Notes under the pieces: generated by a model
Databases searched by the model: none
The model's input: the letters and a program-made list of their open reading frames with translations, nothing else
Told to the model about the DNA's origin: nothing
Shown here: positions 1-64,000 of the stretch, piece after piece
How positions within the stretch are numbered: position 1 is the first letter of the stretch
How the letters are laid out: every line of letters begins with the position of its first letter
Origin: Okamejei kenojei
Taxonomy: Eukaryota
Direction of reading: 5' to 3'
Length of the DNA: 64,000 nucleotides
Assembly (NCBI GenBank): GCA_035221665.1
Contig: CM069133.1
Coordinates: 44,764,001-44,828,000, forward strand
Position numbers and translations under genes: made by a program

Positions 1-1525
1 CTCACCAGCTTAGTCTTAATCATTTTGATGTTGCCCGCAGCTCCGGTACCAATAGTAGGCATAGCATTACTGGATTTCTTTATCTGCCCGGTGGACAATT
101 TTGGCTTACGAACAGTGTTGTCTGGAGCATGTCGTCGACCCTTTTTCACAACATGACTCCACTTTGGAGAGTCTTGCAACGTTAGACCATTGGGACTATT
201 CTCCACGTTTAATGCAAGGCCCTCCGCCACAGCCCTCACTCCAACAACTAAGCCAGAGGCTCCTGCCCGTGCAGCTCCCAGTGCTGTCTCTGCCATGCCA
301 ATGGTTCCATCCAACACCGCCAATGCATCTGGACCACCGCCCCGAGACAGGTCAGTGTTGTGCTCCAATGCACACACTGGAGTAGTGATCAAGGTGCGCT
401 CCAATGCACCCACTCAGCGATCAAATTCCACCGTGATGGCACGAAAATCTTCGCTTATATCAGCCTGTAGCTGCATGATGTGTTTCATTGAACAGACCTC
501 AGCGTACAGCTGCTCCATTCTCCCAAGTAGGCTCGAGACATCTATGTTAGAAAATGTCACCGGCGGCAGTTCATCCAAGTAGTGAGAGACAAATCTAGGA
601 GTATTCTCCGCACACTCATTCATTACTTTAAGGCAACTCTTTATGTTGTTTATGTCTTTCTGTGCCCCTTTATGGGAGACGTTCCGCTGTGTAGTGGGGC
701 AGAGTTCAAACAGAACTTTCTTCGAGGACTCTATCCACTCAGAGTCAAAGGTATTTGCGGCCAGAAGGACGATCTCATCCTGGCTTAATGTCTTAATCTT
801 TACAGCAAGAAAATTAAGTAACTCATCCTCGACAGTAACCTTACCGTCAACAGTCTTGTAGATCACAGGCTTCATTCTAGACCTGCCAAGACGAGGTGCA
901 ATGCCCGCTAACTTCGCCTGTCTACTTGCTGCCCATGGCCGATGCACCAGCTCTCCCGTCGCCTCTTGCCCGGCACCAAGTTCCAGGTTTTCACTGCTCC
1001 ACGCTCTGGGTCTCTGCTGTTCCAAGCTCCGGGCTCCGCTGCCTGACTCCAAGCACCACTGCTCCCCAGCCCAGGTCGGGCCCGTCTCGGACCACAGCTC
1101 CGGCTGTTCACCGCCTGAACTTGGTGCCCCTTCCCCCGGGCCTGGACTGTGACTCTCTCCCGGCACTGCGCTGCCGTTAAGGACCAGGGTTTTCTTCCTG
1201 CAGCAACATCCAGGTGACATTCGCCACTCCTCGCAGGGGTAAGTAAGTTGTTTTTTTGTTTTTTTTCGGGCACTAAGGACACAAGTTTGACTTTGCCGCC
1301 AGGCGCGAGAACGTGACCGTAGTGTGTGTAAGATAGTGTTAATTATCAAGAACCATCAGTTTTTACTGATACTTAATGTGATTTTTGTGTGTAATAAGTA
1401 GTGCTGTCTGCACTCTTATGCTGATACTAAAGTCATGAGCATTATTACTTTCAATGTTAATTTTTTGAATTATTGATAGAATTGGAGTCCATTGCCTAAG
1501 GCAAGACAGGACTATGCCTATATAT
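1..1525 (-). mobile_element. RTE-X-type LINE, 5' UTR and ORF1 (runs off window start)
   Basis: ORF 414..1349 contains MKPVIYKTVDGKVTVEDELLNFL...PRFVSHYLDELPPVTFSNIDVSSLL, resembling RTE-X ORF1. Bases 1-543 match 63455-64000, where the same ORF1 lies directly upstream of an APE-RT ORF2. The 5' boundary is approximate. Confidence 0.75.
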
Positions 1526-4500
1526 ATATTCCTTTTACATATCGGGATATTACGGATGAGCCCGATAAATTCTTGGTCAGCAATTTGTCCGAAATAGGAC
1601 GATAAACACTATGAGCCCTATTATTGGCCCTGTCACTTAGATGCTGAGAAAAAATGCAATCCACAAGGAACTCCCATGTATCTAATACTGATAAAATAAC
1701 TTTTACTGTCTACAAAAGACTTCCAATTTCTTATAAAAACAAAATATTGTTTTTTAATGCTATTTCTCCAAATTGCAAGTATAACATTCCTTTTGTACAT
1801 AATTGTTATATTGTTAAAACATTCATAGACCTCTTTGACTATCAAACTGTTATAATGGTCTGGTCAAACATGCAGATAACCAAATTCATATCTTCATGCC
1901 ATGGATGAATTTGTACAACAATAAATTACTTCAACTATGAGTCGTCATAACTTGTTCAAACATCACTCTCAACATTAATGAGAACCATGACGTCCGGTTT
2001 GGGCCACCAAAGCGCCCCTGGCAGTGTCCTGCTACATTTTCATTAGACACTGCCCAATTAGACAGAATGAGGAACATAAAAGAACATCTTTCCTCATTTA
2101 ATTTAGCGAAAATGCATCCACCGCTCCTGCTCCTGGTTTTCCCATGAGAAACATTTGAGCAATCAGTGATTTAATCTGGACACAAATAGATTAATCTTAA
2201 GTAATCCATAGTACTGACAATGTTTTTTCCCATGATTTGTTGTCTGCGACAACATTGTCACCGCCTTAGAGATAAACAGCTGAACTCAAATATTAATGAA
2301 TACGCCACATCTGGTTACCCAGATAATCACTTGATAATGATCTCCTTGACCCATGTGATTGATATATGCCCCAGCTGTGGTATTGTTCACCTGATTGGAC
2401 ATGCAAACTTTCATAGTAGAACAATAAGCTTTTAATCCATAAAAAGCTCCTGATACTCCAATAATTAATACAAATGTTTGGAGAAAAAAGTTTCTTAGGA
2501 CAATCCATTTGCAACTCCCTGGTGTTATTGTCCGTAGTCCCCTAAACAAGGGACGTATCAAATATTAACTTGATAAGAATAGATATTATACTTATCTTAG
2601 CCCAAATAATCACAGAAACTGTCCATCATCTGAGAATACTTGCTTCAGTTTGCAACGGCTGCTAAGCTTATATGTTTAAAGCAGCTTGTGGAACCTTCTC
2701 TATCCACCACTTTAATTCTGATAAAGTATCCTTTGGTAATTGCATAGGCCTGTCAAAAAAGGCCTGCATACTCACATATAATGCTTGTGTTTTTCCCTTT
2801 TTTGGAGCTTTTTTACTCATTTACCTAAGCGCCTTCTCGGATAGAGGGACAAAGTTTGTCAACAAAGCAATGACACATATTTGTAATATTGACATTTTGT
2901 TTCTTGGAAAAAAAAATTCCCCCATATGGTGCTGAATTACTCCTAAACCCAGAATAGTAATTTGTTTAGGAATGCCTAAAACATAGTTTTTATTGGATGG
3001 GTCAGGACCCTTGCCTCTCAAAAGGCTTGAAATTGCTGCACTAATTTGCAGCTGACTCCTGATCAACCTTCCAATTTAAAATGTGATCAAGATAAACCAT
3101 GACCATGTGTCCTCATTAGTGCAAGTGCTGATCTTCTATCAGTGCAAATGCTGTTCCAATAATTGTGTGAACAACCTAGAACTGAGTTTAAGCCATTAGA
3201 CAATGTCTTAACTTGCAACAGCTGACCCATCTAATTAATTTCAAGCACCTGTAAATATGATAATAAATTGGTACTAAATACCATCTTTCAAGTCTTATAG
3301 TAATGATTAACAATTTGTTAACAACAACTGTTTTGCAGTGTTGAAGATGTCCATTTTGATAAAATGTTTTACACTGTAAAGGTGTATTTAAAATGATGTC
3401 TCGTATGGCTTTACCACCACATCTTCCTTTTTCCCTGGGGAAATTTATCTGATACAAATTTGCTTACCTCTTCTTTATTGGAGATATTTTGGGTGCAAAC
3501 CTAAAATCAATTTTTAGGTTTTCCTATACAGGTGAATCAATCATTGATCATAACACACCTGTAATCTCCCACAATTGGAGATTTCATCAACTTCTTCTGT
3601 AACATGTTTTTGCACCTCTTCAAATAAAGCCTTCTATCCCCAACCATATGGGTTCACATAAGGCTGTGTTGGATACAATATTTCTTTACCATACTCCTGC
3701 CTCTGTTTGATCCATTATCAAATCTTTACATTGGATCATAATTTTGCCAATGTTTAATGACCAGTAGTCTTTCCTTTGTAATCAATGTCTTTGATTTATC
3801 TTGAGGCAGGTTTACTCCATAAATAATCAGGAGTTTAACATAACTTGATCTGTATTGACCTGCAAATCTAAAATCCCAATAACNNNNNNNNNNNNNNNNN
3901 NNNNNNNNNNNNNNNNNNNNNNNNNNNNNNNNNNNNNNNNNNNNNNNNNNNNNNNNNNNNNNNNNNNNNNNNNNNNNNNNNNNNNNNNNNNNNNNNNNNN
4001 NNNNNNNNNNNNNNNNNNNNNNNNNNNNNNNNNNNNNNNNNNNNNNNNNNNNNNNNNNNNNNNNNNNNNNNNNNNNNNNNNNNNNNNTAACTAATGGCAA
4101 TTTGTCTTTTTATTAATTTTTTTTTGGTTATTGCACAATGTTTTACTTGTTTTACATAAGTAGTGATGCCACGCACCAGCTTGAAATTCTTTGAAATCGT
4201 ATTTCCTTATGTCTCCATATAATTGAGACATGGGTACCGTAATCGGATTCACCGTTGGTACCTTAATAAAACACAAATGTTTTATCAATAACTGCCGTTT
4301 CAACCATAACAGCCTTATGAAGCTGGTGAGAGGCCAATTAATGTTGGTTACCATGGTTTCCTTTCATGGCCTCACTCCTTCATTCAGGTATCGTACTTAG
4401 TACACTTGTATGTATATTTGTGCTGTAGTGGGTACTTATGACCAGCCACCACTATCAATGCACCTTCAGGGTCAGTTTTTTCATTTTCCTTATACTGCCC

Positions 4501-5204
4501 TGGTACTCCTGAGATTTTGCTCAAGGAGACTACCTCCACACCAATCTGAGGTAGATATTCCCACTGGTAAAAAACCACCATATATTAGTATATGGAAACC
4601 CCTCAGGGTCTGTTTTTGGGAATATTCTGGGCCTTTTTTAAACCCTTTTGGTTGAAATTTTAAATTGGAGTCTTTCTCCATTAATTTATTCTAAGCCATA
4701 AAGCTTTTTTTTTGTCTGGAGGCCTTTTTTATTAGAACTTTTAAATCATGGCCTCTCAAACTTCTTAAAATTTCTCCTCACTGGTGTTTTTCTCATAGCC
4801 AAAGGTTTGTGGAGCAACTAAAGTCTCCCTAACGGGAACTTTAATGGCCACTGGTATCGGAACCGGCTCTGCACTAATCTGCCGTCCCGATCGCTGAGTT
4901 TTCCCCCGGGACGCTTTTTAAACTCTGTTTTTTCACCCGGAGTATTTTCTTTTCTTTTTAACTTTTAAACTCCGTTTTTTCACCCGGAGTATCTACTTTT
5001 CTTTTTAACTCCTGGTGGCTGTACACACCAGCCACGGAGACATGCCCTGTAAGTTATTCAAATGTACTTACCTGATGGCCCGTTCCTACCGCTGAGAGGA
5101 GCTGCGCTCTGCAGCTCTTGCTCTGCCGTCAGCGTCGACGTAATGCCGATCATGCACCAGGCGGGGCTTCTTCACGTAGTCACTCACGTGACTCCGAAGT
5201 AAAA
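1526..5204 (-). mobile_element. Decayed DIRS1-like tyrosine-recombinase retrotransposon (5' terminus, RT, RNase H, MT, N-terminal part of YR)
   Basis: RNase H motif NNTTAGAYINHMG (ORF 2286..2561). MT-like NLFVSRLNH...GAVDAFSL at ~2040-2200. YR N-terminal ISRYVKGI at ~1530-1555. Terminal repeat 5142-5190 is inverted relative to 59630-59677. Confidence 0.75.
3884..4087. other. Assembly gap (204 N)
   Basis: Run of N. Confidence 1.
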
Positions 5205-8200
5205 TAGCTTCTAAGTGCTGACATTTATCACATTAGGCAGATACATTTGAAAAAATTTTATGTAATTGGGATTTTGAATAATGCAATTATGTAATACTTT
5301 AAATTGTGTCAAAGAGTGTCTAGCATTTAATGAACAGTGGTGTATATGTTGTAAACTTTCATCCCATACTTCTGGTCTGATTATTTGACCTAATTCGTTT
5401 TCCCATAATTGCCTATATATTTCTGTCATTGGTACATCGTTTTCCAATAAAATGTTAGAAATATATGATATCAATTTTTCTGTGTTCGGGTGTTTATTTA
5501 GACATTCATCTAAAATTTCTGTCTTTCTATTTCTAAATTCCTGTGTATTTGATTTTACATAGTCTCTGATTTGTAAATATCTAAAGTAATCTTTTGAATG
5601 TAATTCATAAATTTGTTGTAGTCCTTGAAATGAAAGAAAGGAGTTTTCCCTGTCGAGATCGCCCATCTTATTAATTCCATAGTTTTTCCATTGTAAAAAA
5701 CCTTTGTCCATCATTGAGGGTTTAAATGTAAAATTGTTTACAATGGAGAGTTAGTGGTATACATTCCAATTTTAATGTTTTCTTTAGTTGTTTCCAGATA
5801 CGTATCCCACTTTCTATTATAGGGTTTTCTCTATAGGTTTTCTTACATAGTTTAGTATTGGCAAATAAAATCGAGCTAATTTCAAAAGGTGAACAATCTT
5901 CTTTTTCCATTTTTAACCAATTTGGTTGTTTATCTATTTCTTCCAACCAAAAGTTCATATTTTTAATATTAATTGCTCAGTAATAAAACATAAAATTTGG
6001 CAGTGCTAGACCTCCATTTATTTTTGATTTACATAAATGTTTTTTATTTATTCTATGACTCTTATAATCCCAGATAAAGTTGGTGACTATGGAGTCAACC
6101 TTCTTAAAAAAAAAATTAAGAAGGTATATCGGAATCAATTGGAAAAGATATAGTAATTGCAGGAGAAAAATCATTTTTATTGCATTAATTCTACCTAGCA
6201 TTGAAATAGGTAATGTTTTCGAATATAAGATATTCTTATGTAATTTATTCAGTAAGAGTGGGAAATTAGATTTAAATAAAGAATAAAATCTTTTTGTTAC
6301 ATAGATTCCAAGATATTTGATTTTTTTCATTTGCTATCTTAAAAGGAAATTGTTGTAATATATGTGGGTTATTTACCATTATTGACATGTTCACTTTTAT
6401 TCCAATTAATGCTATATCCTGAGAATGAGCCAAATTCAGTTATTAAAATTAATAAATTTGAAATACTAAGTTCCGGCTTTGTAATGTAAAGTAATAAATC
6501 ATCTGCATATAAGGAGATTTCACTTTCAGTTTCTCTAGTTTCATACCCATATATTTCAGGATGTAATCTCACGCTTTGAGCTAATGGCTCAATTGCGAGT
6601 GCAAACAATAGTGGGGATAAGGGACAACCTTGTCTACAGCCTCGAAATAAATTACATTTAGTTGATAACATTTGATTTGTTAGTATTCTAGCTGTTGGAT
6701 TAGTGTATAATAATTTAACCCATGTAATAAACTTCTCTCCCAACTTAAAAGTTTCCATGACCGAAAACAGATAAGACCATTCCACCTGGTCAAAGGCTTT
6801 CTCCGCATCTAACGAGATGATTACTAGGTCTTTATTAATACCTCTTTTCGAATATATAATATTGAATAATCGTCTCAAGTTATATGAGGAATATCGTTTT
6901 GGTATAAATCCTGTTTGATCCGGGTGAATTAATTTATTGATCACTGTGCTTAGTCTTTGTGCTAGTATTTTGGTTAATATTTTTTGATCAGTGTTTAAAA
7001 GAGCTATAGCTCTATATGATCCTGGATCATCCAGATCCTTGTCTATTTTAGGTATAAGTGTTATAATAGATTAATTTAAAATTTCTGGTAGTTTCTGTTG
7101 GGTATAAATGTATTCATAGAGTGTCTTCAAAAGTGGTGCAATCAGATCATAGAATGTTTTATAAAATTCCGAACCAATATCATCTGGTCCCAGAGTTTTA
7201 CCATTTTTTAATGATCTGATAGATTCTTTGATTTCTTTTGCTGTTATTTCAGCGTTTAGTGATCCTCTATTTTCTAAATCCAACCCTTTTAGATTACATT
7301 TTTTTTAATGCTTCTATTCCTATCAGGTTTTCTGTTGTTTTGACTGAGTATAAATTTTTATAATATTGCAAAAATCTCTCATTAATATCTTTAGGTTGTA
7401 CTAGTGGTTCACCATTGTGTGATTTAATCCTATGGATTATTTTTTCTCCCTCCAATTTCCGTAATTGACGAGCCAACAATTTTTGGGGTTTATCTCCGAA
7501 TTCAAATTGTAGTGTTTAGAATATTGATAGAGTTTTACAACTTGATCTGAATATATTTTATTTAATTTATATTTCAATGCAGAGATTTTATTATGTTTTA
7601 TCATGGTTGGATTTGCAGCGTTCTCTGTGTCTAATTGTTTAATCTCCTTTTCCAATGCCTGTTGTTCCCTCTGATTCTCTTTATTATAAAATGCTTTAGA
7701 AGAAATCATAATTCCATGGGCATATGCTTTAAAAGTTTCCCATAATAGGGAAGAAGATATTTCCGGCTTATCATTTATTTCAAAGAAAATCTTGATATGT
7801 TCTGTAATGTATTCCTGAGTTACTTTGTCCTTTAAAATTTGTGGGTTAAGTCTCCATTGTCCCTGTTTTTCCATTTTACCATTTATTTTGATCATAAATG
7901 TTAAAGGTGCATGATCTGAGATTGTAATATTATGGTATTTTGAATTGTAAGTGAGTGAGATAAGTTTAGAGTCTACCAAAAAATAATCTATTCTTGAATA
8001 CGTTGTGTGTACAGGTGAATAAAATGAGTATTCTCGTCCAGTTGGGTTTTCTATTCTCCAAACGTCTTTAATATTACTAGTATCCATGTTTGCATTTAAT
8101 AAGTCACCGGAATGCGATTTGATTTTCCGTTGTCTTGATGATCTGTCTAAATAAGAATCTAGGGTACAATTTAAATCTCCTCCAATTATTAGGTTATATT

Positions 8201-10693
8201 GTGCTAATTCCGGGATGGTATTAAATATTTTCTTAAAGAACAATGGGCTGTCAAAGTTTGGTCCGTAAACATTAACAAAGATCATTTTTTGTGCGTTTAA
8301 TTCTCCTATTACAATAATATATCGACCATCATGGTCAGTTATAGTTGATGTGTGTTTAAATAAAGTACCTTTACGAAATAATATTGCTACACCTCTGGAT
8401 TTGTGTGTAAAAAAAGAATGATACGCTTTATCTATCCATTTAGCTTTCAATCTATGCTCTCCATCTTTTTTTAAGTGTGTTTCTTGGATAAAAATCACAT
8501 CTACTTTAAGTGCTTTTAAATGTGCTAATACTTTACCTCTCTTAATTGGTTCATTAATACCTTTAACGTTCCAGCTACAAAACGTTATTCCTTCATTCCC
8601 CATATTAATTTTTAAGTCTTGCATCTTTAGTTTAAGGAGGTCTATAATAGAGCAAATGGTTCAGTTCGACAGGCCCGACCATACACCCGAACTCCGAATA
8701 GACGAATGTCAAGGACCTTGGATGTCTCTCACATATATATCTCCTTTGATCTAATTTATAACTCCATTCAAACTTAAAATAATAATGATAGATTATAATA
8801 TAAGAAAAAAAAGGGATAGATTAAGAAGTTAGTGATGTGTACAAAGAAGGAAAAAACTACATCTAGTATTAGTGTAGTTAGTGATAGCCATACTAACATG
8901 GCTAACCATCTACCGACTTCCGTAATTGATGTTACAAACTTAACCAGCTCCATGGTTTCTTAAAATTATTATTCCATAACAGTATTTTACCAGGGATATT
9001 AAATTCTGAAGTATTCGGGTTCCATTAGTCGGGATTGTGAGGATACATATTTTTAAAACATATTAAATAATATAATTTAAAAAAGAAAGAAAATGGGGGA
9101 AAATTTCTTTTAAAAAAGGGTTCCAAGGAGGACAAATGAAATCAAACTTTACATTCAGCACAATTATAATTACTATTTATCTGATTCTACTAAATAATTC
9201 AGTTATGATTAAGTATTAGTCATTAATGATAATTATTAACTCTAATTAGTAATGGTACCGCGCTATAGTTTTAGTATTTATTAGTTATTTGTATTAATAG
9301 TGCTATTATTCTAATTATTAGTATCCATGGGAGAGTTTCCAATCCGCATCTTTCTCCAGCATCTTTCCCAGCTTCCTCAGACAAGTCGTTAGTTCCATCC
9401 AATCCTGCAAAGTCAGTTTATTCCTTGATGTAGTTCGATTTTAGATTTTAAAGATATGATTCAATCTTCCACTTGATCCTTAGTCTTCTGGGCATAGTTC
9501 AGTGCTTCCACAGGGTTGGTGAAAAAATATTGTTTCTGATTGTAAGTGACTCTTAGGGTAGCTGGATACCTCAGACCATACTTCAAATTCTTCACTTCAC
9601 TCGTTTCGTTTCCTGGAGACCTCTGCTGGATAGTCTCGATAAATACTGATCTTATCTCCTTCATATATAAGATTTCTGCTTCTAATAATTTTTTCCATCA
9701 TCTCCTCCAGAACATAGTCACACTGGACTCTGATTATCATTTGTCTTGGAGGGGCATCATGTCTTGTCTGACGTCTCATCACTCTGTGTGCTCGAGCAAG
9801 TAAAGGCTTTTGATCCAGAGATAAAACTTTTTGCAGTAAGTTTGCAGTAAATTCTCGGGGATCTTGATTCGCCTCTCTCCCTTCTTGAATACCCACAATT
9901 CTTAGGTTCTGTCTTCTCTGGCGTCTTTCCAATTCAGTGCATTTATCAGTTATTTTGCCCAGTAGTTCAGATAGACGTTAATTTTCTCTGATGAGTTTTT
10001 CCGCAGTCCGAACACTTGTTTCGGCTATCTCCTCAAGGTTCTTTATGGCTGTCGTCTGTTGATTCAGTGTTTGTCCCACGGGATCCATCTTTTCCTCAAG
10101 ATCAGTTACCACCTTTTTGATTTTAACATTTGTCTCTTTTGTCATGACTGCAGCTTGTTCAGTCACTGTTTCTGCAGTTTCCTTCCTCAGTTTGTCTGAT
10201 AGATCCGTAACCGTGGAATTACTTTCAAGCTTTAACTCCATCATCTCCTCCTTGATTTTTTTAATTTCTTCCTTGAAATTCATTTTCTTTAATTCTTCAT
10301 TCGTTTTTGCAAGTTCAGTCTTTAATTCCAGCTTTATTTCATCCTTTAAATTTGCAATTTCTTGTGCAATAAAAATTCTGAGATCTTCACTTTCCGATTT
10401 TTTCGTTGTTTTTTTCGATACATCTTGGGATAGTTCCCTACGTGAGCCCGAGGCTTCCATCAGGCCTTTTTCTTGTTCTGCCAGTTTCTGCCTAGTAACT
10501 CGACTTTTCGGTTTTTCAGCGAGGGGGCTGCGCTGCATAGACATTGCAAGTCGCACGCCTGATGACATCACTCACGACATTCGATACAGAAGCAGCAGGT
10601 AGCAGGTGGGTCATTTTATCCCTGTTTTTTTCAGCGTTTTCTCAAGGAGCTGGCTGGCATTGCTCCCTAGCCCTCCATGGTGCCACCGGAAGT
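5205..10693 (-). mobile_element. L1 LINE (L1a): 5' end, ORF1, spacer and most of ORF2; frameshifted; 3' part cut off by DIRS
   Basis: 5' start ACTTCCGGTGGCACCATGG. ORF1 ERRQRRQNLRIVGIQEG (9461-10571, 3 frames). APE domain SWNVKG/QETH/GGDLN/SDHAP (7437..8624). RT DAEKAFD, RQGCPLSP, LYADD (6369..6944). Confidence 0.95.
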
Positions 10694-10708
10694 CGGATGT
10701 TTCTCTCT
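10694..10708 (+). repeat. L1a target-site duplication copy (CGGATGTTTCTCTCT)
   Basis: Identical 15-mer at 58893-58907 abuts the L1 3' tail. Confidence 0.9.
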
Positions 10709-28950: not shown

Positions 28951-28957
28951 ATAATCA

Positions 28958-46925: not shown

Positions 46926-46952
46926 ATATTTTAAATCTTTCTCATATCCGAG

Positions 46953-52172: not shown

Positions 52173-52399
52173 TAAGCAAGTTATTGAAATTGTTGCTTTA
52201 AATGTTAGCACAAAGGCTTCATGCTGCCCAGACAGAAGATGAGGTGCTTGAGATTGGGCCTCGTTAGAACAGTGCAGGAGGTCTGAGACAGACAGATCAG
52301 AGCGGTAGTGGGATGGAGAATCAAAGTCACAGGCATGGATGATGTATTTTTATAAACCATGTGGATTAGTTTGTTAAATACAGCTTTTGTCTTTACAAG

Positions 52400-52761: not shown

Positions 52762-53414
52762 GTAAGGAAGATCTGTCTGTGTTGTGCTGTGAACGATAAA
52801 ATCACATTAACAACTGTAAGAGGACATGAGATCCACTGACAGCTGGAGCCGAGATCGGCCCACTCCATTGTAGGTTCCAACCCTTGCCCTGGGCTTCCCT
52901 TGCTCAGCACTGCCCCAGTGGTTGGACAACAGTGCTGATTCCAGCCAGAATGCACGGAGCTCCCTGCAGCAGGATCAGAGATTCAGAACCACATTCATCT
53001 GCTGAACCTCCAGTCCCTGTGTCTGTGACATGGTCTGTGTTGCAAAGATCCACAGACTGCCCTGGGGTATTTACATCCGTCTCTTTCATTCACATTGAGT
53101 CCGGGAACCTGTATGTTCTCTCACTGAATATTACACAGACAGTACAGCACAGGAACAGGCCCTTTGGCCCGCAATATCTGTGCAGAACATAATGGTACTG
53201 TAAGTTAAACTAATATCATCTGCCAACACATGATCCATATCCCTCCATTTTCTGTAGATCCATGTGCTTCTTAAAAACACTATCATATCTACAAATATTT
53301 CACTGCAGTCTCCTAGGTGTGTTCTTCCAATCCCCATTCTGAAGGACTCTATCTGCACACACCATCAACAGTGATTAATTCAATTAATTTAATTTAATTT
53401 CTTCCTTCTCCAAG

Positions 53415-53781
53415 TCCCAGCCACCATCCTGAAGCTGTCTGTTGTGAGCGACAATGTAACTGGAGAACACACCCTCGTGTGCTGTGCTGAAGGGAAGCCC
53501 CCTGCAAAACATCACGTGGATCGACCCAGGGAACAGCGCACTGCCCGGGAACAGTAGTGAGATGACAGTCACGCATGATCCAGAGAAACTACTGACTGTG
53601 GGAAAGATGCTTCACCCCAGACTGCCAGGGAAATACACGTGTGTGGCTGTGAATGAGTACCAGAGAGACACGCGTGAGATCCGCCTATTCGAGGATGGAC
53701 TAAGAGCGTTGGCCATTCGAACTGCCATTTATGCGGTCTATTTTCTTATAATTGGCTTCACATTCTGTTGGTTGAAGAGAG
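53415..53781 (+). CDS. C2-set Ig plus transmembrane exon, with a 1-bp insertion as assembled
   Basis: Acceptor ccttctccaag|. PATILKLSV..LVCCAEGKPPA /+1 near 53498-53509/ NITW..GKYTCVAVN..ALAIRTAIYAVYFLIIGFTFCWLKR. Donor G|gtgaac. Resembles Siglec-15 domain 2 (CTAEGEPPP, GRYTCTAAN). Confidence 0.85.
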
Positions 53782-54833
53782 GTGAACGTCGCCATCTCAG
53801 CTCCATTGCTGGTGTCAACAGGAGGGATGCTGCACCTCCACTGGCAGTGGCAGGTTCTGGTGATGTGGATCAGGCAGTGTAACTTCGGAGAGAAACAATG
53901 CTACATTCCCCCAGCTATGACCGTGTGTCTGTGGGGTACATGGAGCTGTCCTCACGTCAGTCCGACTCAGCGGCTCCTCCCTCAGTAGTGTATCCCATAC
54001 ATTTGCAACTGCATTGCTGCTGATTCCTGCATCCGCATAGAACTCAAATTTCACACATGCCTCTTAGCTGTCTTCCTTCATCCTAAACCATGGCTTAATC
54101 TCTACCTTAGCTGACAGAGGCCTTGGCAGCTTTGAATCGTTTTCATGAACTTCTTTGCTAATTCCTTCCCCAAGGCAGAGCAAGAATAGATTTTCCCTGA
54201 TCCTCATTTCCCACCCACTAGTCTCTGCATTCAATGGATCAACCTTTATAGCTTCTGTTACCATCAATGGTGCACGTACACCAACAGACACATCTTCCAG
54301 CTGCCTACACTTTCAGCATCCTGAAGGGTCCATTCCCTTTGCGACTCCATCATCTGCTCTTCCATGCCATTCAACCATTTACTCAGAACAGTGCATGGTG
54401 TAATTTTCCAGGTTAGACTCTGCAATCAACAATATCGGTTTGCTCACTTTCTCTGTCTGTGTCAAGGCTGGTCAGCTGTGTTGTAGATAATCCATCTGCA
54501 TTATGAACTTGTTTTCCTCTCTCTACGGGCACGGCCTGATCTGTGGCCATCTCCTGTAGCTCTGGCTTCCATTTGCAGTTTCTACGTGTTCTCTTTCTAA
54601 ATGCTCAGATAACTTTGTCAATCATTTATTACTATGGAAACCAGACATCTCCCTATAAGACATTCCTTTTTTGCTGTCCCTCTCTCTCTCTATCTCACTC
54701 TTTCTGCACCAACAATCTTTTTTATTGTCTCAGCTGTTCAATCAGAAGCACAAACTCTTTCTCTCTGCAAAGATGCCACCTGACCCGTTGAGTATCCTCT
54801 GCACTCTGGGGAGACATTCCCTTTTCATTGCAG

Positions 54834-54868
54834 ATCACAGGTGTCCCCTGCATTATGGAGCGTTGCCT
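54834..54868 (+). CDS. Probable short cytoplasmic exon (DHRCPLHYGALP)
   Basis: cttttcattgcag| and |gtaagc sites; phase 1 in, phase 0 out. An alternative acceptor at 54841 is possible. Confidence 0.5.
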
Positions 54869-54969
54869 GTAAGCTGAAACCGCATAATATTTTTTTCGCA
54901 CTAATTCTAAGAGTGCAAATTTTATTCTGCATCTCAAATTTTTCACTGGTGATTTGTGAATTCTGCAAG

Positions 54970-55131
54970 GGAGAATTTCCATTACCGGAACATCCGGAAT
55001 ATGGGCTTTACTCAAATTGGACTGGTGGTTGGGTTCAAGGATTGGGCACGTCTTCTAACATGAGACGAGATCTCCTGGTAAAGAGTGATGACTACATTGA
55101 CGAATCTGGTATCCAGTTCACTTGTGTCTGA
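54970..55131 (+). CDS. Probable terminal cytoplasmic exon (GEFPLPEHPEYGLYSNW...DDYIDESGIQFTCV*)
   Basis: ttctgcaag| acceptor after a 101-nt intron; phase 0 is open to TGA at 55129-55131; Tyr motifs present. Confidence 0.45.
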   Translation, partial: GEFPLPEHPEYGLYSNWTGGWVQGLGTSSNMRRDLLVKSDDYIDESGIQFTCV

Positions 55132-56837
55132 AGCCAGTGTGCTAAACTTTAATTAAGGCACAAAGGTGAAATGGCGGTTGGCTAAAATAGTTTCAAAATG
55201 AAAGAAAATGCCGACAGTAATGTTGTGAAGATTATTTATAGAGGATTGGGAGATTGGAAGACAGAAGTAAACATCTTAAAAAATTATGAGGACAGAATTG
55301 ATGGAGAAAATTGGTAAATATAAAAGGGATAAAAGGAGCTTCTGCAAGTATAAAAAAGGAACAGAGTATCCAAAGCAAACAATGGATGAAAGCACCAAAA
55401 GTACAGCAGATACGCTGTCTGACGATACAAAGACAGGTGGCTTAGCAAGTGATGAGGACACAATGGGCCGGCACAGACATATAGATGGTTTAAGTGAGAG
55501 GGGAAAAAAATAGCTGAATTAGTATGATGGGGGGGAAATGTACCCTGTAATGTTACATTAAAACATCCTTACTTTTATACACTCATCTTGTGCAATAAAA
55601 ACCAGCATTCCATTTGTCTTTACAACTGCTTACAATACCTGCACGCAAGTCTCTTGTGTTTCACATGCAACATACCCAATTTTAGGGGAAAATGAAATGG
55701 CAAGTTATTATTTGATTGGTAGGTGAATACAAACCATTTCCTAACTGTCTTCCACATATCTTAACACCATCACCCTCATTCTACGGCCCACTGGTTCCTA
55801 TTAGATTTCATTCCCCCAATATCAGTGCTTGAATTTTGCATACCTACCTCAATGTGGTATTTGATTAAAGATCTTCTGAACTTGCAAACACACTGCACCC
55901 ACACATATTTTCCTACCAATTACATACATAGAAAAAAACTCCCAGCAGGGTTGTCGAACCTTGAATTAAAAAAAATAGCCCCAGTACAGGAAGCATGTGG
56001 AAGCTCTTTGGAGAGGGTGCAGAAAAGGGTTACCAGGATTAGAAAGTATGAGCTATGAGAAGATGTTAGGACATACTTGGATTGTTTTCTCTGGAGAGTT
56101 GGATATTGAGGGAAAATCTGATAGAAGTATAAAAAATTATGAGAGGCAGAGATTAGGTCAACAGTTAAAACCTTTTCCCCAGGTAAAAATGACTAAGACT
56201 AGAGGGTATCGCTTTAATACGAGGGGCAGGTTTTTTTCTACATAGAGTGATGGAGCCTGGAATGCCCTGCCGGGTTTAGTGGAATCAGATACAATAGGCC
56301 ATCCAAGAGGCAATTAGATAGACACGTAGATATGCAGGGAAGGGGGATATGTGGATCACATGCAGACAAAAGAGGTTAGTTTACCTTGCCATCAAATTTG
56401 GTTGGGACATGATGGGCTGAAGAGCTTGTTCCTGTGCTGTACTGTTCCTATCTTCAGTATAATCAAATTAATTTTATCTAATCCCTTAAAACTTTCAAAG
56501 CGTGCTGTTATCACATGTATAGATTCCAGCAAAATACATGCTAATTGTGTGAGGCTAACTGGTGTGTAGTTTGTTTATTTCTCTCAAACACCATTTGTTG
56601 CATTTGGCACTTGCCAACCTTCAGGAAACGTTGCAGAAGATGTGAAATTTGGGGCCATTGCAACCAGTGCATTTTGCGGTGACTGGCAAGTGGCAGTGGC
56701 AAGGGAGACGTGAGTGTGGAGGGATGAGCGCACCTGGGTGCAGGGGCAAAGTGGTCTCTTGTCAAGGCAGAAATGGGAGGTGACATGAAGATAGACCATG
56801 GGTGGGCATCGCGTTGAAGTTGGTGGAAATATCATAG

Positions 56838-57310
56838 ATTATTACCTATACGAGGTAGTTTTACCGGGCAATATTAGTTCGTATTTTGACAGGTCCAAAA
56901 ACGCACAGTTTCCGGCGGGCAATATTACTTGGTATTTTTCTTCTTCCGGGTTTCGCCATTGACTTTACGTTGAAAAACTGCGGTCAATAACAAAGATGAA
57001 ATATTACATCCGGCATACATCCGGGACACGAACCCGGCCAAAGTTCACAGCGAAGAATCAGCTCACGGCATCTAAACAAACATTGGCAGCCTCCAGCAGT
57101 GCGAGATTCGCGTCTCTTGACGACGACGGAATTATTTTAATTTACGTGCGGATAGGTAATAATTATAATATTGACTGTCTTCTTTCGGGAGACACCAGGA
57201 ATATTGCCCGCACTGAAATTCATATTGCCCTCGTCTTCGACTCGGACAATATGATTTCAGTTTGGGCAATATTCCTGGTGTCTCCCTCAAGGCCAGTCAA
57301 TATTATATTA
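56838..57310 (+). mobile_element. Second hairpin-terminated non-autonomous element, inserted in a Penelope remnant
   Basis: ATTATTACCTAT (56838) pairs with ATAGGTAATAAT (57152). Hairpin 57167-57304. Confidence 0.6.
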
Positions 57311-57571
57311 ATGTTCACGTGGATGTGGAGGCTGGTGGGGTAAAAGATAAGGGCCAGTGGAACTCTAAACCTGTTCTGCCTGGGGGAAGGGAAGGGGGGG
57401 AGCTGCACGAATGGAGGAGGACACAGGTGAGGGGCATCATCCACAACTGTAGGGTGTTGAGGAGTGTGGGGGGCAACCGCATTTCCTCTAAAAGGAGGAC
57501 ATCCCAGATCTCCTAAAGTGGAAATCACCCATCTTGAAATCATTCAAGAAGAGGCTTTCCACTCCCGGAGA

Positions 57572-58327
57572 TCACAATCAATCAATCACAATAATACTTT
57601 ATTAGCCAAGTATGTTTTGGCAACATATGAGGAATTTCATTTATGAAGTCAATCATACAAATAAAAAGCAAAGGGACACACAAAATACATTTTAACATAA
57701 ACATCCACCACAGTGACTCCTCCGCATTCCTCACTGTGATGGAAGGCGAAAAAAAGTTAAATCTCTTCCCTTATTTGCTCTCCCGCGGTTCGGGGCCTCG
57801 AGTTCTCCGTTGATGGAATGATCTTGAGTCGTGTAGCTGGCATCATTTGGGGCCCCCGCATCATCAGCTCCTGCGTTGGGGGGATGTCAGTTCCCCCGCG
57901 CCAGTGATCGGACCCCCTCGGGGCTGGTCGAACCTCTGCATCATTGGAGCTCCCGACCCGGCCTCTCCCGAGACTGCAAGCTCGATGGTAAACTCCGCAG
58001 GCCGCGACTGGAGCGATCCCAGGCAAGGGTTCAGCTTCGATGTTAAGTCCACACCCCACAGAGGGGCTCCAAAGTCAGTCTGATGAGTTCTCCAGCTCCA
58101 TTGATGTTAGGCCGCAGAGCGACCGGAGATGCAACCCGGAAAACATCGCATCTCCGGTGAGGTAAGAAACTAAGAGAAAAAGTTTCCCCCTCCCCCCTCC
58201 CCCTCCCCCCACATGAAACAAACCGGGGAAACATTTACACAAAACTTTTAAAACACACTAAAAATGTTAAAAAGGATGGAAGAACGGACAAGACTCTTGG
58301 TGAGGCTGCCAATCATGCACCGCCCCT
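57572..58327 (-). mobile_element. Non-coding retroelement with LINE-type tail (related to 15361-16195)
   Basis: Shared blocks with 15361-16195. Its tail is the reverse complement of 11222-11280-like sequence. Confidence 0.55.
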
Positions 58328-58907
58328 GGTGCAACAGGCAGTATGGGTTTGGGGAATTGTCAGGTTGGTGGTTTTGGTGGAAAGTGATGAGATGCATTAT
58401 GGGATGGGAGACAGAGGTCTGCTGGCTGTTTGTAGTTCACTACATGAGGAGGTGTTCAAAGAGCTGTCCCATGGACACACCAAGGGTGAATGGAATAGAT
58501 CTATCAGATGGTATGTCCAGAACATGGGTAGATCTGATCTACGGTAGAAATGTGTGTGAACAAGTGCTGATGGAACTGTGAACATTTTCACAATTACCCC
58601 CATGCTGCTCAATAAAACTTTGTATCTTCACCTTTTCCCATTCCCACCCCAGCTTCTGCAGACTATTACAGGACGATATTATAGAATATGGTTCACCAAG
58701 AGTATCAGAGAATAAGCGGCAGCCCTTTTGTACCAGGACAGGAAAATAAAATGACTCCTTGACAAATAACAAGAGCAACACAGTAGACTGTAAATCAAAT
58801 GGCAGTAAAGACGAGGAATGGGAGAAGACCAGGCTGGGGACATTAAAAAAAGGAGCACTGTAAACAGAGGTTCAAGGTTCAGCCACTGATTGCGGATGTT
58901 TCTCTCT

Positions 58908-59573
58908 TTTGTTAATTATTTTTATTAGAAGTAAGTACATAATAAAAGAAGAATATACATGTCACATACATTCTTAATATTATTAATATTAACAATTATA
59001 TCTTAATTGTACTATGCATTTTTTTTATTTTTAATACAGGTAGGAATTAATGGAGAAAAAATAAAGTAAAAATAGAAAATCAAAAAGATGAATGAGGTGT
59101 TAAGCAGGTTATACATCATTGGAGATATATCTATGGTTTATTATATGTGATTCTTCACCTATTCTTTCATTCAGGCTTCAGTCAGGTTCTCGCACCGAGC
59201 CATTTTAACCCTTTAAATATTCAATAAATGGAGACCATATCCCTCTGAGATGATCCAGCTTGTCCAGTCGGACAAGTCTTAATCTTTCCAGGTGAAGTGT
59301 CTCCGACATTCCTGTAATCCACATTTTGATTGTGGGGGATGTAAGACCTTTCCAAAATTTTAATATTAATTTTTTCCCAATTATTAAACTGTAATCGATA
59401 AAAATTATTTGATTCGTTGTTATTAATTGATCTGTTTCTAATATTCCTAATATTATTAATTTTGAGTCAGGAACCAAATTCGTATTAACAACATTCGAAA
59501 TTATCTTAAATATTTCTGTCCAAAAGTTAGTAATTTTTTATGTAGTTTGTGAATGAGTGCGTTTTTAAATTAG
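58908..59573 (-). mobile_element. 3' end of L1a (ORF2 C-terminus and 3' UTR)
   Basis: ORF 59205..59477 (IIGKKLILKFWK...WSPFIEYL). Joins 5205 in frame as HLEA|NLKTHSF. TSD at 58893-58907. Confidence 0.9.
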
Positions 59574-60135
59574 TAAGATTAAATGAGAACTTACCAGTTC
59601 GAAGTTTGATTGTTATTTTATGAGGAGTACGATGAGGGATTACGTGAAGAAGCCCTGCCTGGCGCATGATCGGCATTAATTCAAAGCAGCGGCATGAAAA
59701 AAACAGAACCAATATAGCCGGAGTAGTAGTAAGACTGTACATAGATTGAGAAACTACCAGTACGATCATTTATTTTTATGAGGGTTGGAGTGGAGGGCAC
59801 GTAATCCTCAAGTTTTTTCATTATAAAAGAATGAAAATAATGCCCTTTCTATTGAAAGGCAAATTTATCACCAAAATCAATTGATAATATAATTTGATAA
59901 TATAAACAAAGCAACAATTCCAGAGAACCCAACACTGCGTGTCTAAACCTGACACCATGACTGGTTCTTTGTAACTTTAAAATTTATTTTACATCCTCCT
60001 ACGGCCTTTAATCATTGCTCGAGCGGCCCACCCTGTGCCATTCCTTTGAATGTGTCTAACTCCTTAATGGAGTGATTTTCCACATCTCAATGTCTACTTC
60101 ACTGAGTCTTAAACATGTTTTAACTATCTAGAATG
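59574..60135 (-). mobile_element. 3' end of the DIRS element (YR C-terminus and right terminal repeat)
   Basis: Decayed HSTR-like region (HSIK) at ~60060-60135. Terminal repeat inverted relative to 5142-5190. Confidence 0.65.
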
Positions 60136-63100
60136 TAATTAATAATAATAATTATAACTTTATTACGGACTCAAGGTCCAGACAAGGGGCAACATTACAT
60201 TAAAAATGCATTGCATATCAAATATCATAAATATATATAAAATCATGGTAAATCACATAAAAACACCATAACTTAGATATTTTTTAAAAAACCCACAATA
60301 CTTAAGTTAAAAATCCAGAGTAAAAAATGATCAATGTCGTACAACGAGACAACGATACCAGTGTCTCCACAACTGGGATTCGTAGCGTGTAGTGCTAACC
60401 CTTATGTTTGTCAAGGCCACAATAAGCACATTTTTAGAGTAATTTATCCTGCAAATGAATTTATACATGTGGTGTCTTAGGATAGCTTCTAAAGTACTGA
60501 CTCCTGCAGCCACAAACATATTACTGGCACTACACCATCTTGGTTGCCTTAGCAATGTTCTCATGGCATTGTTATAAGCAACATTTAGTCTCTGCATACT
60601 TGCCTTTAAATAGTTCGACCACAGGTGTGCAGAGTAAAGGGGTGTGCAGTATGCTCTAAATAAAGAGATCTTCACCACGTCTGCACGCGCACCAAATTTA
60701 TGCAAGAGGATATTTGCCTGTATATACAGCATACGTCATTGCCTATAAATATCCTCATCATCTGTCATTTGTTCTGTAATAATATGCCCTAGATATTTTA
60801 TCTTATTACAGACACTAAGATTGTTGTCAGACAATTTAAAATCAGGATATTTTAGGCTTTTATTCTCTTTGGTTCTACAGACCATAACAGCACTCTTACT
60901 AGCATTATATTTAATGTCATGTTCAAACCATCACGGAACATGCAGGAAGGAGCTGCTGGAGACCAGCGCTAGATGGACTAAGACGACAAGCTCATCTGCA
61001 TACATAATATGGTTCACTAATATATTACCAATCACGCACCAGTGTTACAGGCTTTCAATTTTTTAGACAGATCATCAATATATAGATTAAAAAGGACTGG
61101 GGACAAAATTCCCTCTTGTCTAACACCATTGCTAACCCCAAATGGGGCTGAGACCCTATTGCCCCATTTTATTTGCATAGTCTGGTGGGCATACCAGTAG
61201 GCCAGTATTCTCACAATGTATTTAGGCACCCCTCTTTGACGCATTTTTACCAAACAGCTCTCTGTGATTAACACGGTGAAAGGCTTTGGAAGCATCAATA
61301 AAGCACATAAGGATTGAAGAGTTTTTGCCTCTATATTTGTTTACAATCTCCTTTTGGGCATATATGCATAAGTCAGTGCCATGTTTAGATTTAAAGCCAA
61401 ACTGGTTATCTGTGGAGTTAACAAACTCATGTATTCTATCCAGCAGAACTCTTTCTAAGACTTTTGACAATATGCTGGCTAAAGCTATGGACCTGTAATT
61501 ATTTAGACTGCCTACTTTACCTGCTTTGTCCTTAATAACCGGCACTAACAGGACAGACAAACATTGAGTCTGGTAACATGCCATGTATCATAAAGCCAGT
61601 AAAACAAATAGCTAGGAGAGGAGCTTTCCTCATACTCGCATACTTAAGATGTTCAACAGAGATATGATCCAAGCCACTTGCTTTGTTGTTGGACAGCTTG
61701 TTCATGGCATGATACACCTCATGTGACCATCGAGTCATTACTCTTAATATTGTCCACCCTATTACAAGTCTCCTTGGACACAATTGAATAAAGTGCTATA
61801 ATGTTGTCGGCATAACTCCGCGATATTAGCCATTCCGGAGATTCCATCTACAGTACATGGTAGAGATGTTTTGCAACTGCTAAGAGCTCTCACTTCTTTC
61901 CAAAAAGCTGTAGCATTGTTACTTAGCAGCTTCTTAGCCATGGAATCAGCCCTCATAGCTTGCTCATTTGTACAGATGAAGCGAACAGCATACTTATACC
62001 TTGCATTAGTGAGCTTCTTGTGCTCAGACACAGGCCCCTGTCTGGGTTACCTGCCATAGCCCATGCTTTGGTGGCTTCACGGGCTTTCAGTATGGATACT
62101 CAGCTACATACTTTTCCAGCCAGGTCTGATGTTATGTGTCTTATTTTTATGCTTGCAGTAGGACTTACTGCCTACATATAAGGCGCTTACTATATCTTTA
62201 TACATGGAGCAGATATCTTCCCTATGCTTCATATCTTTACAGTTAACATTACTACATATTATTGCATCTTTAGGTAGATGAATATTGCTTAAGGATTTAT
62301 TTGTATGGGCATAATAGGCTAGGATGGCGTCCTTTGTAAGCGTTGACCAGTCCAGTTTTTCTGTGTTAAGGCTATTTCTATCTCTGGATACCACAGGTAT
62401 GTGTTCAACATTTATTGTCATAGCAACAGGTATATGATCAGTCATTGTGCCCGTACAGAATGCTCATACACCCAAATGAGGCATGTGCATCAGCTGTACT
62501 AATACAGTGGTCCAGCCATGATGTGGTTGTGCCAGGCCTCACTAATATAAGTATAGCTATCTGTAGGTAAAAGCACTTTGCTTGATAATATTAAATTATT
62601 ATCTTGACAGAACTGAGCCATATGATTGGCAAATAATGAGTTCCTATCTGAGATATCTGCATTCATATCCCCAATGACATATACGGTACATATAATTATT
62701 GTTTTGAATGAAAGAATAGATGAAAGCAGGTCTATTTAAATATTCATCCTCATTCTGATGACATTCATAGGGTGTATATACATTCAGGATAACAAATTCC
62801 TTATTGTTGTGAATAAAGTGTATGGCAATGCACCAATCAACATCAAGCTGAATCAAATTTACTGATGAGTCAAGCTTCTTGTTCCATAGAATGGCCACCC
62901 CACCTGGTATCCTACCTCTGACTATTCCCATGCCAAGGTCAGTTGTAGACTCCCCAACCCCGTGAAAGTTGTCATTGAGAGAATTGAGTTTGTCATAGTC
63001 TTGCTTCGCTAAGAATGTCTCTTGCATACATAGTATGCCACAGTTTCCAGGAGGTTGTCAACAATGAGCGGCGAGAGCTTTATCCCTTGCACTCTGGCCC

Positions 63101-64000
63101 AAATGCAGGCCACGACAATTGTATGATAGTACTCTAATGTTCATTTAGTAAGACTAGTGAGTGCCCCTAGCACCAGCAGGTATACTCATTCGCCCCGCGG
63201 CAGGCGCAGTGCTTGATCCGATTACTCCAACCCTGCGCGGCTCGTAATAGCGCCGTACAAATGCCCCTTCTGGCCAGATCTCCGGATTGTACATTTCGCC
63301 AACCTCATTGCATTCCGCAGATACTTTAAATGAACTGTATCTACTGTGTACATTGTCAATCTTTTGACAGGTAACCTCACGGCCAAGTTTTTCATTAAGA
63401 TAGACAGATAAAGTTCTGACGTCTAGATCTGGTGAAAACGTGGAGGCAAAAACACTCACCAGCTTAGTCTTAATCATTTTGATGTTGCCCGCAGCTCCGG
63501 TACCAATAGTAGGCATAGCATTACTGGATTTCTTTATCTGCCCGGTGGACAATTTTGGCTTACGAACAGTGTTGTCTGGAGCATGTCGTCGACCCTTTTT
63601 CACAACATGACTCCACTTTGGAGAGTCTTGCAACGTTAGACCATTGGGACTATTCTCCACGTTTAATGCAAGGCCCTCGCCACAGCCCTCACTCCAACAA
63701 CTAAGCCAGAGGCTCCTGCCCGTGCAGCTCCCAGTGCTGTCTCTGCCATGCCAATGGTTCATCCAACACCGCCAATGCATCTGGGACCACCGCCCCGAGA
63801 CAGGTCAGTGTTGTGCTCCAATGCACACACTGGAGTAGTGATCAAGGTGCGCTTCCAATGCACCCCACTCAGCGATCAAAATTCCACCGTGATGGCACGA
63901 AAATCTTCGCTTATATCAGCCTGTAGCTGCATGATGTGTTTCATTGAACAGACCTCAGCGTACAGCTTGCTCCATTCTCCCAAGTAGGCTCGAGACATCT
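60136..64000 (-). mobile_element. RTE-X-type LINE: ORF1 3' half, ORF2 (APE-RT, many frameshifts) and 3' tail
   Basis: ORF1 stop at 63154. ORF2 ATG at 63144 (MNIRVLSYNCRGL), QETFL, GGVAILW, NNYRSIAL, DNQFGFK, DASKAF, GVRQEGILSP, YADE. AATAAA plus (ATT)n tail at 60136-60164. Confidence 0.9.

What the first reader, a model, noticed from the sequence alone, without database searches (positions are those of the whole stretch)
1..64000. Window is one full turn of a ~63.45-kb tandem unit carrying an immune-receptor gene
Seen: (1) 1-543 equals 63455-64000 apart from 7 single-base indels, with no substitution noticed. (2) The L1a 5' end (10693) and an L1 3' tail (58908) are flanked by the same 15-mer CGGATGTTTCTCTCT (10694-10708 and 58893-58907), in permuted order. 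(3) L1 ORF2 broken at 5205 resumes in frame at 59573. So the right end of the window continues into its left end. Both TSD copies lie on the same side of the N gap, so scaffolding alone does not explain this. Inference: a recent head-to-tail amplification of the Siglec-15-like locus, or a collapsed array or circle in the assembly.
Basis: partly seen in the sequence, partly recalled or inferred. Interest (0 to 1): 0.85.

Follow-up and report, generated by a model that had tools for sequence, protein, structure and literature searches.

The report
Two-copy 63-kb repeat, possibly artefact
The window really does run once around a 63.45-kb head-to-tail repeat that carries a Siglec-15-like immune-receptor gene, but it looks like two near-identical copies rather than an amplified array, and I could not tell a very young real duplication from an assembly error.

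Summary
All three observations hold. Bases 1-543 equal 63455-64000 with no substitution and 7 gaps, every one a homopolymer-length difference. The 15-mer occurs only at 10694 and 58893. A full-length minus-strand LINE-1 has its ORF2 zinc knuckle cut at 5206/5207 and resuming in frame at 59572. Both window ends therefore cut one nested composite: L1, a ~9.1-kb insert holding the N run, and an inner non-LTR element.

Earlier notes place an in-register gene copy one period upstream. The gene downstream is out of register. The assembly evidence is thus for two copies, not an array.

Public contigs from two other animals and a related species show ~0.5% indel noise in the window. They hold two to three sequence types of this stretch. 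Their contigs leave the window at 58891, beside the L1 target-site copy, and do not enter the L1.

Only contigs were served, so depth could not be tested. The N run lies between the copies, a known mark of false duplication.

- Real, very young two-copy tandem duplication: about 0.45.
- Assembler re-use of one locus: about 0.40.
- Larger array or circle: about 0.07.

Either way this is ordinary.

The parts
1..543 (.). Left copy of the terminal direct repeat. It lies inside the ORF1-like frame of the inner non-LTR element.
   Evidence: Equals 63455-64000 with 0 mismatches and 7 homopolymer indels.
63455..64000 (.). Right copy of the terminal direct repeat, offset 63,454.
1..5206 (-). Right-hand part of the ~9.1-kb insert nested in L1 ORF2. 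It holds the 5' part of the inner non-LTR element (ORF1-like frame 414-1349), non-coding DNA, the N run, and an inverted-repeat arm at 5141-5206.
   Evidence: ORF list. No Pfam hits on its other ORFs. The inverted repeat matches 59614-59678 at 87% over 67 nt.
3884..4087 (.). N run of 204 letters inside the nested insert. Continuity across it is unknown.
   Evidence: The flanks neither overlap nor repeat.
5207..10693 (-). LINE-1, 5' part: 5' UTR, fragmented ORF1 (about 9461-10571), and ORF2 endonuclease and RT up to the first half of the zinc knuckle.
   Evidence: L1 ORF2p match at E 6e-52. Exo_endo_phos and RVT_1. ORF1-like frames. CDKCQHLEA ends at 5207.
10694..10708 (+). Copy of the 15-bp target-site duplication next to the L1 5' end.
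10709..58892 (+). The 48.2-kb segment between the two 15-mers. It is TE-rich DNA plus the receptor gene. If the duplication is real and has two copies, its junction should lie here, upstream of the gene.
   Evidence: The position of the junction is inference.
42794..55128 (+). Siglec-15-like receptor gene. Exon-like open frames: V1 42794-43318, degenerate V2 46919-47229, V3 49955-50395, V4 52354-52769 (frameshift at a homopolymer near 52620-52635), C2 plus TM 53460-53879, tail 54784-55128.
   Evidence: V-set and I-set hits. V1's best solved match is Siglec-15, 7zoz, E 1.2e-10. tblastn and sequence views. The spliced model was not joined or searched.
58557..58891 (+). Last 335 nt before the L1. 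Contigs of three public runs cover 58531-58891 and differ there by about 14 substitutions and 9 gaps per 358 nt. All three leave the window at 58891.
   Evidence: records 6-8, 24 and 32.
58893..58907 (+). Copy of the 15-bp target-site duplication next to the L1 3' tail.
58908..59572 (-). LINE-1, 3' part: the second half of the ORF2 zinc knuckle, the C-terminal ~110 aa (59208-59537), the 3' UTR and an AT-rich tail.
   Evidence: A contig of run X20 joins other DNA at 58907/8, which marks the family's 3' end (table 5).
59573..64000 (-). Left-hand part of the nested insert. It holds an inverted-repeat arm at 59614-59678 and the 3' part of the inner non-LTR element: C-terminal frame 60331-60732, RT 61032-61584, endonuclease 62644-63027, ORF1-like frame 63154-63780.

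Best explanation
In the sequenced animal a ~63.45-kb segment is present as two near-identical head-to-tail copies. The segment holds the Siglec-15-like receptor gene, its 3' flank, and an old full-length L1 that itself holds a ~9.1-kb insert with a further non-LTR element.

The window starts inside the L1 composite of the first copy and ends 546 nt further along the composite of the second.

The inferred mechanism is one recent tandem duplication, by unequal crossing-over between flanking repeats or by a replication template switch. Its junction should lie upstream of the gene, somewhere in 10.7 to about 19-31 kb. It must post-date all three nested insertions. It is so young that no substitution separates the copies. 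The 7 differences are homopolymer miscalls of an unpolished long-read consensus.

Shown here: the repeat in the assembly, the nested anatomy, and the noise level. Inferred: that it exists in the animal's DNA, that there are exactly two copies, and where the junction lies.
For: - The wrap-around has three independent supports. These are the 546-nt overlap, the 15-bp TSD pair in permuted order, and the L1 ORF2 zinc knuckle split across the window ends in frame.
- Both TSD copies and both halves of the composite lie in one gap-free stretch, 4088-64000. A simple unmerged overlap of two contig ends at the N run therefore cannot produce the layout.
- Earlier notes place the same TM motif (RxxxYAVxFL) 9669 nt before the window start and the gene end 8317 nt before it. 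Here the equivalent distances are 9669 and 8323 nt before position 63454. The upstream copy is thus in register to within 6 nt.
- The next gene downstream has V exons that do not match this unit's register. This fits exactly two units followed by a different neighbour.
- Public contigs show 0.3-0.9% gaps against near-identical sequence. This matches the 1.3% indel-only difference between the two copies.
- Each of two other animals holds two to three sequence types of this stretch, so the locus is multi-copy in the species.
Against: - No read depth could be had, because all runs were served as contigs.
- An N run lies between the two gene copies and the region is noisy. Both are marks of false duplications (PMC9516828).
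- Two identical 63-kb units are usually collapsed by long-read assemblers rather than resolved. This rests on my own knowledge.
- In two other animals and a related species the gene's 3' flank runs past 58891 into other DNA without a branch. The window-like type is not at double depth there. If real, the duplication is private or polymorphic.
- The window switches abruptly at about 58557 from identical to about 6% different from the only type seen in those animals, 335 nt before the L1. This could mark a wrong join.
- The register of the upstream copy rests on unchecked AI notes.
Confidence: 0.45

Rival explanations
1. Assembly artefact: one locus laid down twice. The most likely form needs two real, closely similar gene copies that share roughly 20 kb or more up to about 58556. 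That repeat has two exits. The contig that starts at 4088 took the wrong exit and re-used the reads of the stretch '335 nt + TSD + left part of the L1 composite', which truly follows only the upstream copy. It then stopped at the same hard spot, the N run. A less likely form is a single-copy locus whose graph loop or haplotype bubble was traversed twice inside a contig.
For: - There are no substitutions and only homopolymer noise between the copies.
- An N run lies between the duplicates and the region is rich in erroneous words; the best public runs share only 0.58-0.60 of the sampled words. Both are hallmarks in PMC9516828.
- There is an abrupt switch of sequence type at about 58557, just before the junction with the L1 (records 6-8).
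- Public contigs of three runs continue past 58891 into other DNA with no branch.
- There is no in-register third gene copy downstream.
Against: - The permuted layout lies inside one gap-free stretch. The common 'duplicate on each side of a gap' error is therefore not enough, and a rarer in-contig misjoin is needed.
- The public runs are from other animals and are contigs, which drop rare branches. Their silence is weak evidence.
- The 335-nt divergent block could be a real haplotype or paralogue mosaic. Similar blocks are seen elsewhere in the 6 kb laid.
Confidence: 0.4
2. A larger real array of more than two units that the assembly under-represents, or an extrachromosomal or re-integrated 63-kb circle whose sequence was placed in the scaffold.
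For: The window alone is equally well read as a rotation of a circle. Word depth in the gene's 3' region equals roughly three units in each of three runs.
Against: - The downstream gene is out of register.
- The extra depth in other animals belongs to types that are 4-8% divergent, that is older paralogues, not to the window-like type.
- The scaffold is chromosome-sized, with notes 9 and 37 Mb away.
Confidence: 0.07
3. No unit at all: the two ends are simply two separate insertions of one young retroelement family, and the 15-mer match is chance.
For: The 546-nt overlap lies in a retroelement. Related sequences are highly repeated in all runs (table 2).
Against: - The same three-level nesting continues across the ends. 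The L1 halves join in frame, the insert has paired inverted-repeat arms, and the 15-mer pair was never seen in 100 shuffles.
- Independent insertions would not share a TSD.
Confidence: 0.01

Closest known systems
Recent tandem segmental duplication or copy-number variant in an immune-receptor gene cluster
   Same: Head-to-tail copies tens of kb long carry a whole receptor gene. The copies are near-identical, and older, more divergent paralogues sit nearby.
   Different: Existence in the DNA is unproven. There are only two in-register copies. The junction itself was not identified.
False duplication in long-read assemblies (Ko et al. 2022, PMC9516828)
   Same: An assembly gap lies between the copies. 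There is an excess of erroneous words and indel noise, and no substitutions between the copies.
   Different: The duplicated layout sits inside one gap-free stretch rather than simply on both sides of the gap. Depth and linked-read tests could not be run.
Full-length LINE-1 insertion with target-site duplication and nested later insertions
   Same: It has an APE endonuclease and RT matching L1 ORF2p, ORF1-like frames, an AT-rich 3' tail, a 15-bp TSD, and a nick site TCTCT/AAGGG.
   Different: Its two halves are seen at opposite ends of the window, because the window is a rotation of the repeat. The frames are broken, partly by assembly indels.

Membership tests
Real tandem segmental duplication | Two or more head-to-tail copies in the assembled sequence | tested here: met
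   546-nt overlap at offset 63,454, and a nested composite cut by both window ends. The in-register upstream gene copy is known only from earlier notes.
Real tandem segmental duplication | Read depth or k-mer multiplicity proportional to copy number in the same individual | not testable with these tools
   Only Logan contigs of other animals were served, and no single-copy control lies inside the window.
Real tandem segmental duplication | Reads that span the duplication junction, or a whole unit | not testable with these tools
   No raw long reads were available. The junction was not located.
False duplication (assembly artefact) | Assembly gap between the duplicated pair | tested here: met
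   The N run 3884-4087 lies between the upstream gene copy and this one. The criterion is from PMC9516828.
False duplication (assembly artefact) | Excess of erroneous k-mers or sequence noise in the copies | tested here: inconclusive
   7 homopolymer indels per 546 nt between the copies; 0.3-0.9% gaps against near-identical public contigs; word share of only 0.6. Real near-identical duplicates also escape polishing.
False duplication (assembly artefact) | Half or lower read depth over each copy | not testable with these tools
   The contigs give no usable depth baseline.
False duplication (assembly artefact) | Copies abut the gap on both sides (unmerged contig ends) | tested here: inconclusive
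   The layout is compatible with this in its period. However, the permuted composite lies within the gap-free stretch 4088-64000, and the flanks beyond the window cannot be seen.
LINE-1 (outer element) | ORF2 with APE endonuclease and reverse transcriptase related to L1 ORF2p | tested here: met
   E 6e-52 to 8sxt residues 4-360. RVT_1 at E 3.5e-29.
LINE-1 (outer element) | Target-site duplication flanking the 5' end and the A-rich 3' tail | tested here: met
   15-bp pair at 10694 and 58893.
   An ORF1-like frame of 311 aa (414-1349) continues into 63154-63780, upstream of the endonuclease. The clade was not determined.
Siglec-15 | N-terminal V-set domain most similar to Siglec-15 | tested here: met
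   7zoz at E 1.2e-10, ahead of CD33. V-set hit at E 5.5e-6.
Siglec-15 | V-C2 ectodomain and a mid-membrane lysine for DAP12 pairing (from my own knowledge) | tested here: not met
   There are three to four V-like exons before the C2 exon. The TM stretch begins with Arg (..AIRTAIYAVYFLIIGF..) and has no Lys.

The most novel reading that the evidence does not exclude
The unit is a germline amplicon. It would be either an array of more than two 63-kb units that the assembly under-represents, or a circle that has re-integrated. It would carry an activating-type Siglec-15-like receptor and be polymorphic between individuals of a slowly evolving cartilaginous fish.
Probability: 0.07. Interest if true: 0.55.

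Novelty: new member of a known kind. Interest (0 to 1): 0.2.

Why it matters
If real, this is a very young copy-number gain of one immune-receptor gene. It would give a dated, nested retroelement marker for following receptor-gene turnover in a cartilaginous fish.

If it is an artefact, it is a false gene gain. One of the two 'Siglec-15-like' genes noted by the scan should then be dropped.

Either way, the measured ~0.5% indel noise matters. Frameshifts in this locus, such as the one in the V4 exon, and 'intact' or 'pseudogene' calls made here should not be trusted without accurate reads.

Tried and rejected
- **Read depth.** The one run search returned only Logan contigs. The one lay gives per-contig word depth with no single-copy control. 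No copy number is claimed from it.
- **Tails of the three public contigs that leave at 58891.**
  - A protein search with ORF 10723-10902(-), meant to reach such contigs, found no candidate.
- **Aligning the two L1 ORF2 C-terminal pieces to solved L1 ORF2p.** No match was found. Pfam was also blank for them and for the L1 ORF1 pieces.
- **Looking for a transposase in the nested insert.** None was found.
- **Junction at 58891|58892.** I considered that the unit junction lies there, 1 nt outside the TSD. I rejected it as the leading view. A random breakpoint that close to a TSD edge is very unlikely. It would also predict a third in-register gene. An empty, L1-free site in the other animals explains the coincidence better, though the alignment should then have reached 58907.
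- **Earlier-notes searches.** Searches for other reports of the repeat gave nothing.
- **Spliced receptor model.** It was not joined or searched as a whole. The exons were searched separately by reference.
Full report
**Observation**

The window has one N run, 3884-4087.

- Self-comparison finds 1-543 equal to 63455-64000 over 548 columns, with no mismatch and 7 gaps.
- A global alignment shows every gap is a one-base difference in the length of a homopolymer. Two extra bases are in the left copy and five in the right.
- The 15-mer CGGATGTTTCTCTCT occurs only at 10694 and 58893, on the same strand. It never appeared in 100 shuffles.

**The N run, tested first**

- Its flanks neither overlap nor repeat one another.
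- Frames drawn through it are only X.
- The second copy of this region covers only the first 546 bases. Continuity across the run therefore cannot be tested.
- The period of 63,454 includes the estimated 204 letters. The spacing of the two 15-mers, 48,199, does not.
- I did not try to fill the run.

**Anatomy of the ends**

The outer element is a full-length LINE-1 on the minus strand.

- ORF 7437-8624 matches L1 ORF2p residues 4-360 with E 6e-52.
- 6369-6944 carries RVT_1.
- Frames at 9461-10571 look like a fragmented ORF1 with a coiled coil, although Pfam is blank for them.
- The 5' end is at 10693 and the AT-rich 3' tail ends at 58908.
- A contig of run X20 joins unrelated DNA at 58907/8. 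This marks the family's 3' terminus independently (table 5).
- The implied nick site TCTCT/AAGGG fits the L1 endonuclease preference. That preference is from my own knowledge.

The ORF2 zinc knuckle is cut.

- ..CDKCQHLEA ends at 5207 and NLKTHSFTNY.. resumes at 59572 in the same frame.
- This gives C-x2-C-x9-H-x4 with Tyr where Cys is expected.

Between the two L1 halves lies an insert of about 9.1 kb, 59573-63454 plus 1-5206.

- It has inverted-repeat arms at 59614-59678 and 5141-5206.
- No transposase was detected in it.
- Inside it sits a further minus-strand non-LTR element. This has an ORF1-like frame (414-1349 and 63154-63780), an endonuclease (62644-63027) and an RT (61032-61584). Because it has an ORF1-like frame, I would not call it RTE.

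The window ends cut this innermost element. Three nested levels continue across the ends, so the right end of the window runs into the same composite that its left end leaves.

**The gene**

- On the + strand, open frames at 42794-43318, 46981-47229 and 49955-50395 carry V-set domains. Frame 53460-53879 carries an I-set/C2-like domain followed by a TM stretch.
- V1's best solved relative is Siglec-15 (7zoz, E 1.2e-10).
- A fourth V exon (52354-52769) changes frame at a homopolymer (gggaaac) near 52620-52635. The second V exon is degenerate.
- No other V-like exon exists in the window.
- I searched the exons separately by reference.

**How many copies?**

Earlier notes of this scan are unchecked AI notes.

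- They put a TM helix with the same RxxxYAVxFL motif 9669 nt before the window start, and the end of a V-V-V-C2 gene 8317 nt before it.
- In this window the same features lie 9669 and 8323 nt before position 63454. An upstream copy is therefore in register to within 6 nt.
- The downstream gene noted at +18.4 to +52.6 kb has its V exons at +30.9 to +39.0 kb. That corresponds to unit coordinates 31.4-39.6 kb, where this unit has no V exon.
- That gene is a different neighbour, not a third unit.
- The assembly evidence is for two in-register copies, with the window running from the composite of the first to the composite of the second.

**Public reads**

The run search found only Logan contigs.

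- Five runs of a coded organism A, from two samples, hold 58-60% of the sampled words.
- Runs of a related organism B hold 22%.

I laid four runs on 53400-59399. The findings are these.

- (a) Against near-identical contigs the window shows 0.3-0.9% gaps. This is the same kind and size of noise as between its own two ends. The 7 indels are therefore assembly noise and say nothing about age.
- (b) Each animal holds two to three sequence types of this stretch. Some are near-identical to the window and some are 4-8% different. The word-depth splits are unequal, so the locus is multi-copy in the species through older paralogues or deep haplotypes. The window-like type is not at double depth.
- (c) Contigs of X1, X5 and X6 (records 8, 24, 32) align up to 58891 and then continue for 457-468 nt of sequence unlike the stretch. 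They do not enter the 15-mer or the L1 tail.
- (d) In X1 that contig accounts for all the depth there.
- (e) In X1 a contig identical to the window over 58346-58556 feeds into a contig that differs from the window by 14 substitutions and 9 gaps over 58531-58891. This is an abrupt switch 335 nt before the L1.

Contigs drop rare branches, and the runs are from other animals. Absence of the junction is therefore weak evidence.

**Reading the 58891 boundary**

- Homology that ends 1-2 nt from the outer edge of a TSD is very unlikely to be a random duplication breakpoint.
- The more likely reading is that those contigs come from copies without the L1 composite, that is an empty site, and that the last 16 nt were clipped in a 6%-divergent alignment.
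- Their tails would then be the sequence at 10709 and onward.
- If so, the composite is absent from the copies seen in two other animals and in the related species. It would belong to a divergent haplotype or paralogue lineage carried by the sequenced animal.

**Real or artefact?**

A simple unmerged overlap of two contig ends at the N run cannot give this layout.

- The gap-free stretch 4088-64000 already holds the right part of the composite, the 48 kb, and the left part of the composite.
- Either the animal has at least a partial second copy, or a contig is misjoined.

For a real, very young two-copy tandem duplication:

- the coherent layout;
- the exact register of the upstream copy;
- a different gene after the second unit;
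- a multi-copy receptor cluster as the setting.

For an artefact:

- no substitutions between the copies;
- an N run between the copies and excess noise, both named as marks of false duplications by Ko et al. 2022 (PMC9516828);
- the abrupt type switch just before the junction;
- the junction not being seen in other animals;
- the general tendency of assemblers to collapse, not resolve, identical 63-kb units.

A specific artefact fits well. Two truly similar gene copies share a long near-identical stretch, and the contig takes the wrong exit and re-uses the left part of the composite.

My estimates are real two-copy duplication 0.45, artefact 0.40, larger array or circle 0.07, and the rest for more complex histories.

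**Comparison with known things, and verdict**

Tandem duplications of immune-receptor genes, L1 insertions with nested elements, and false duplications next to gaps are all well known. Nothing here needs a new mechanism.

- The finding is a correct and careful structural observation.
- It should be read as 'two copies, possibly false', not as an amplification.
- The useful by-product is a warning. This locus carries about 0.5% indel noise, so frame-based claims about the receptor genes here need accurate reads.

Noticed in passing
window 52590-52660: The fourth V exon changes frame at the homopolymer run gggaaac, compared with the in-frame V3 exon at 50230-50260. Given the measured indel noise, this is more likely an assembly miscall than a pseudogene lesion.
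   Followed up: partly
window 46919-47229: The second V-like exon is degenerate. Only the C-terminal half aligns well to V3. The N-terminal half is in another frame and has a deletion.
   Followed up: partly
window 57600-57799 and 11193-11277: A SINE-like element at extremely high copy. Summed word depth is 10^5 to 10^6 in every run, including the related species. The two copies lie in opposite orientation on either side of the L1 insertion site.
   Followed up: no
window 56154-57594: Contigs of X1, X5 and X6 each join 56153 to 57595, skipping 1,441 nt. The anchors are short (22-25 nt), so this may be a repeat effect or an insertion difference between copies.
   Followed up: no
window 28957-29700, 37094-37838, 30189-30982: Two direct copies at 93% identity over 745 nt, and inverted partial copies, of an unidentified repeat upstream of the gene. 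Reverse-transcriptase-like frames lie at 30207-30524, 32392-33500 and 48868-49134.
   Followed up: no
window 18123-18519: Adjacent tandem arrays: a 19-nt unit in 8.3 copies and a 31-nt unit in 7.9 copies at 95% identity.
   Followed up: no
window 53762-53841: Five linked variant letters form one type that is shared by both organism-A animals and by organism B. This suggests an old paralogue or a trans-species haplotype across the C2/TM exon.
   Followed up: no
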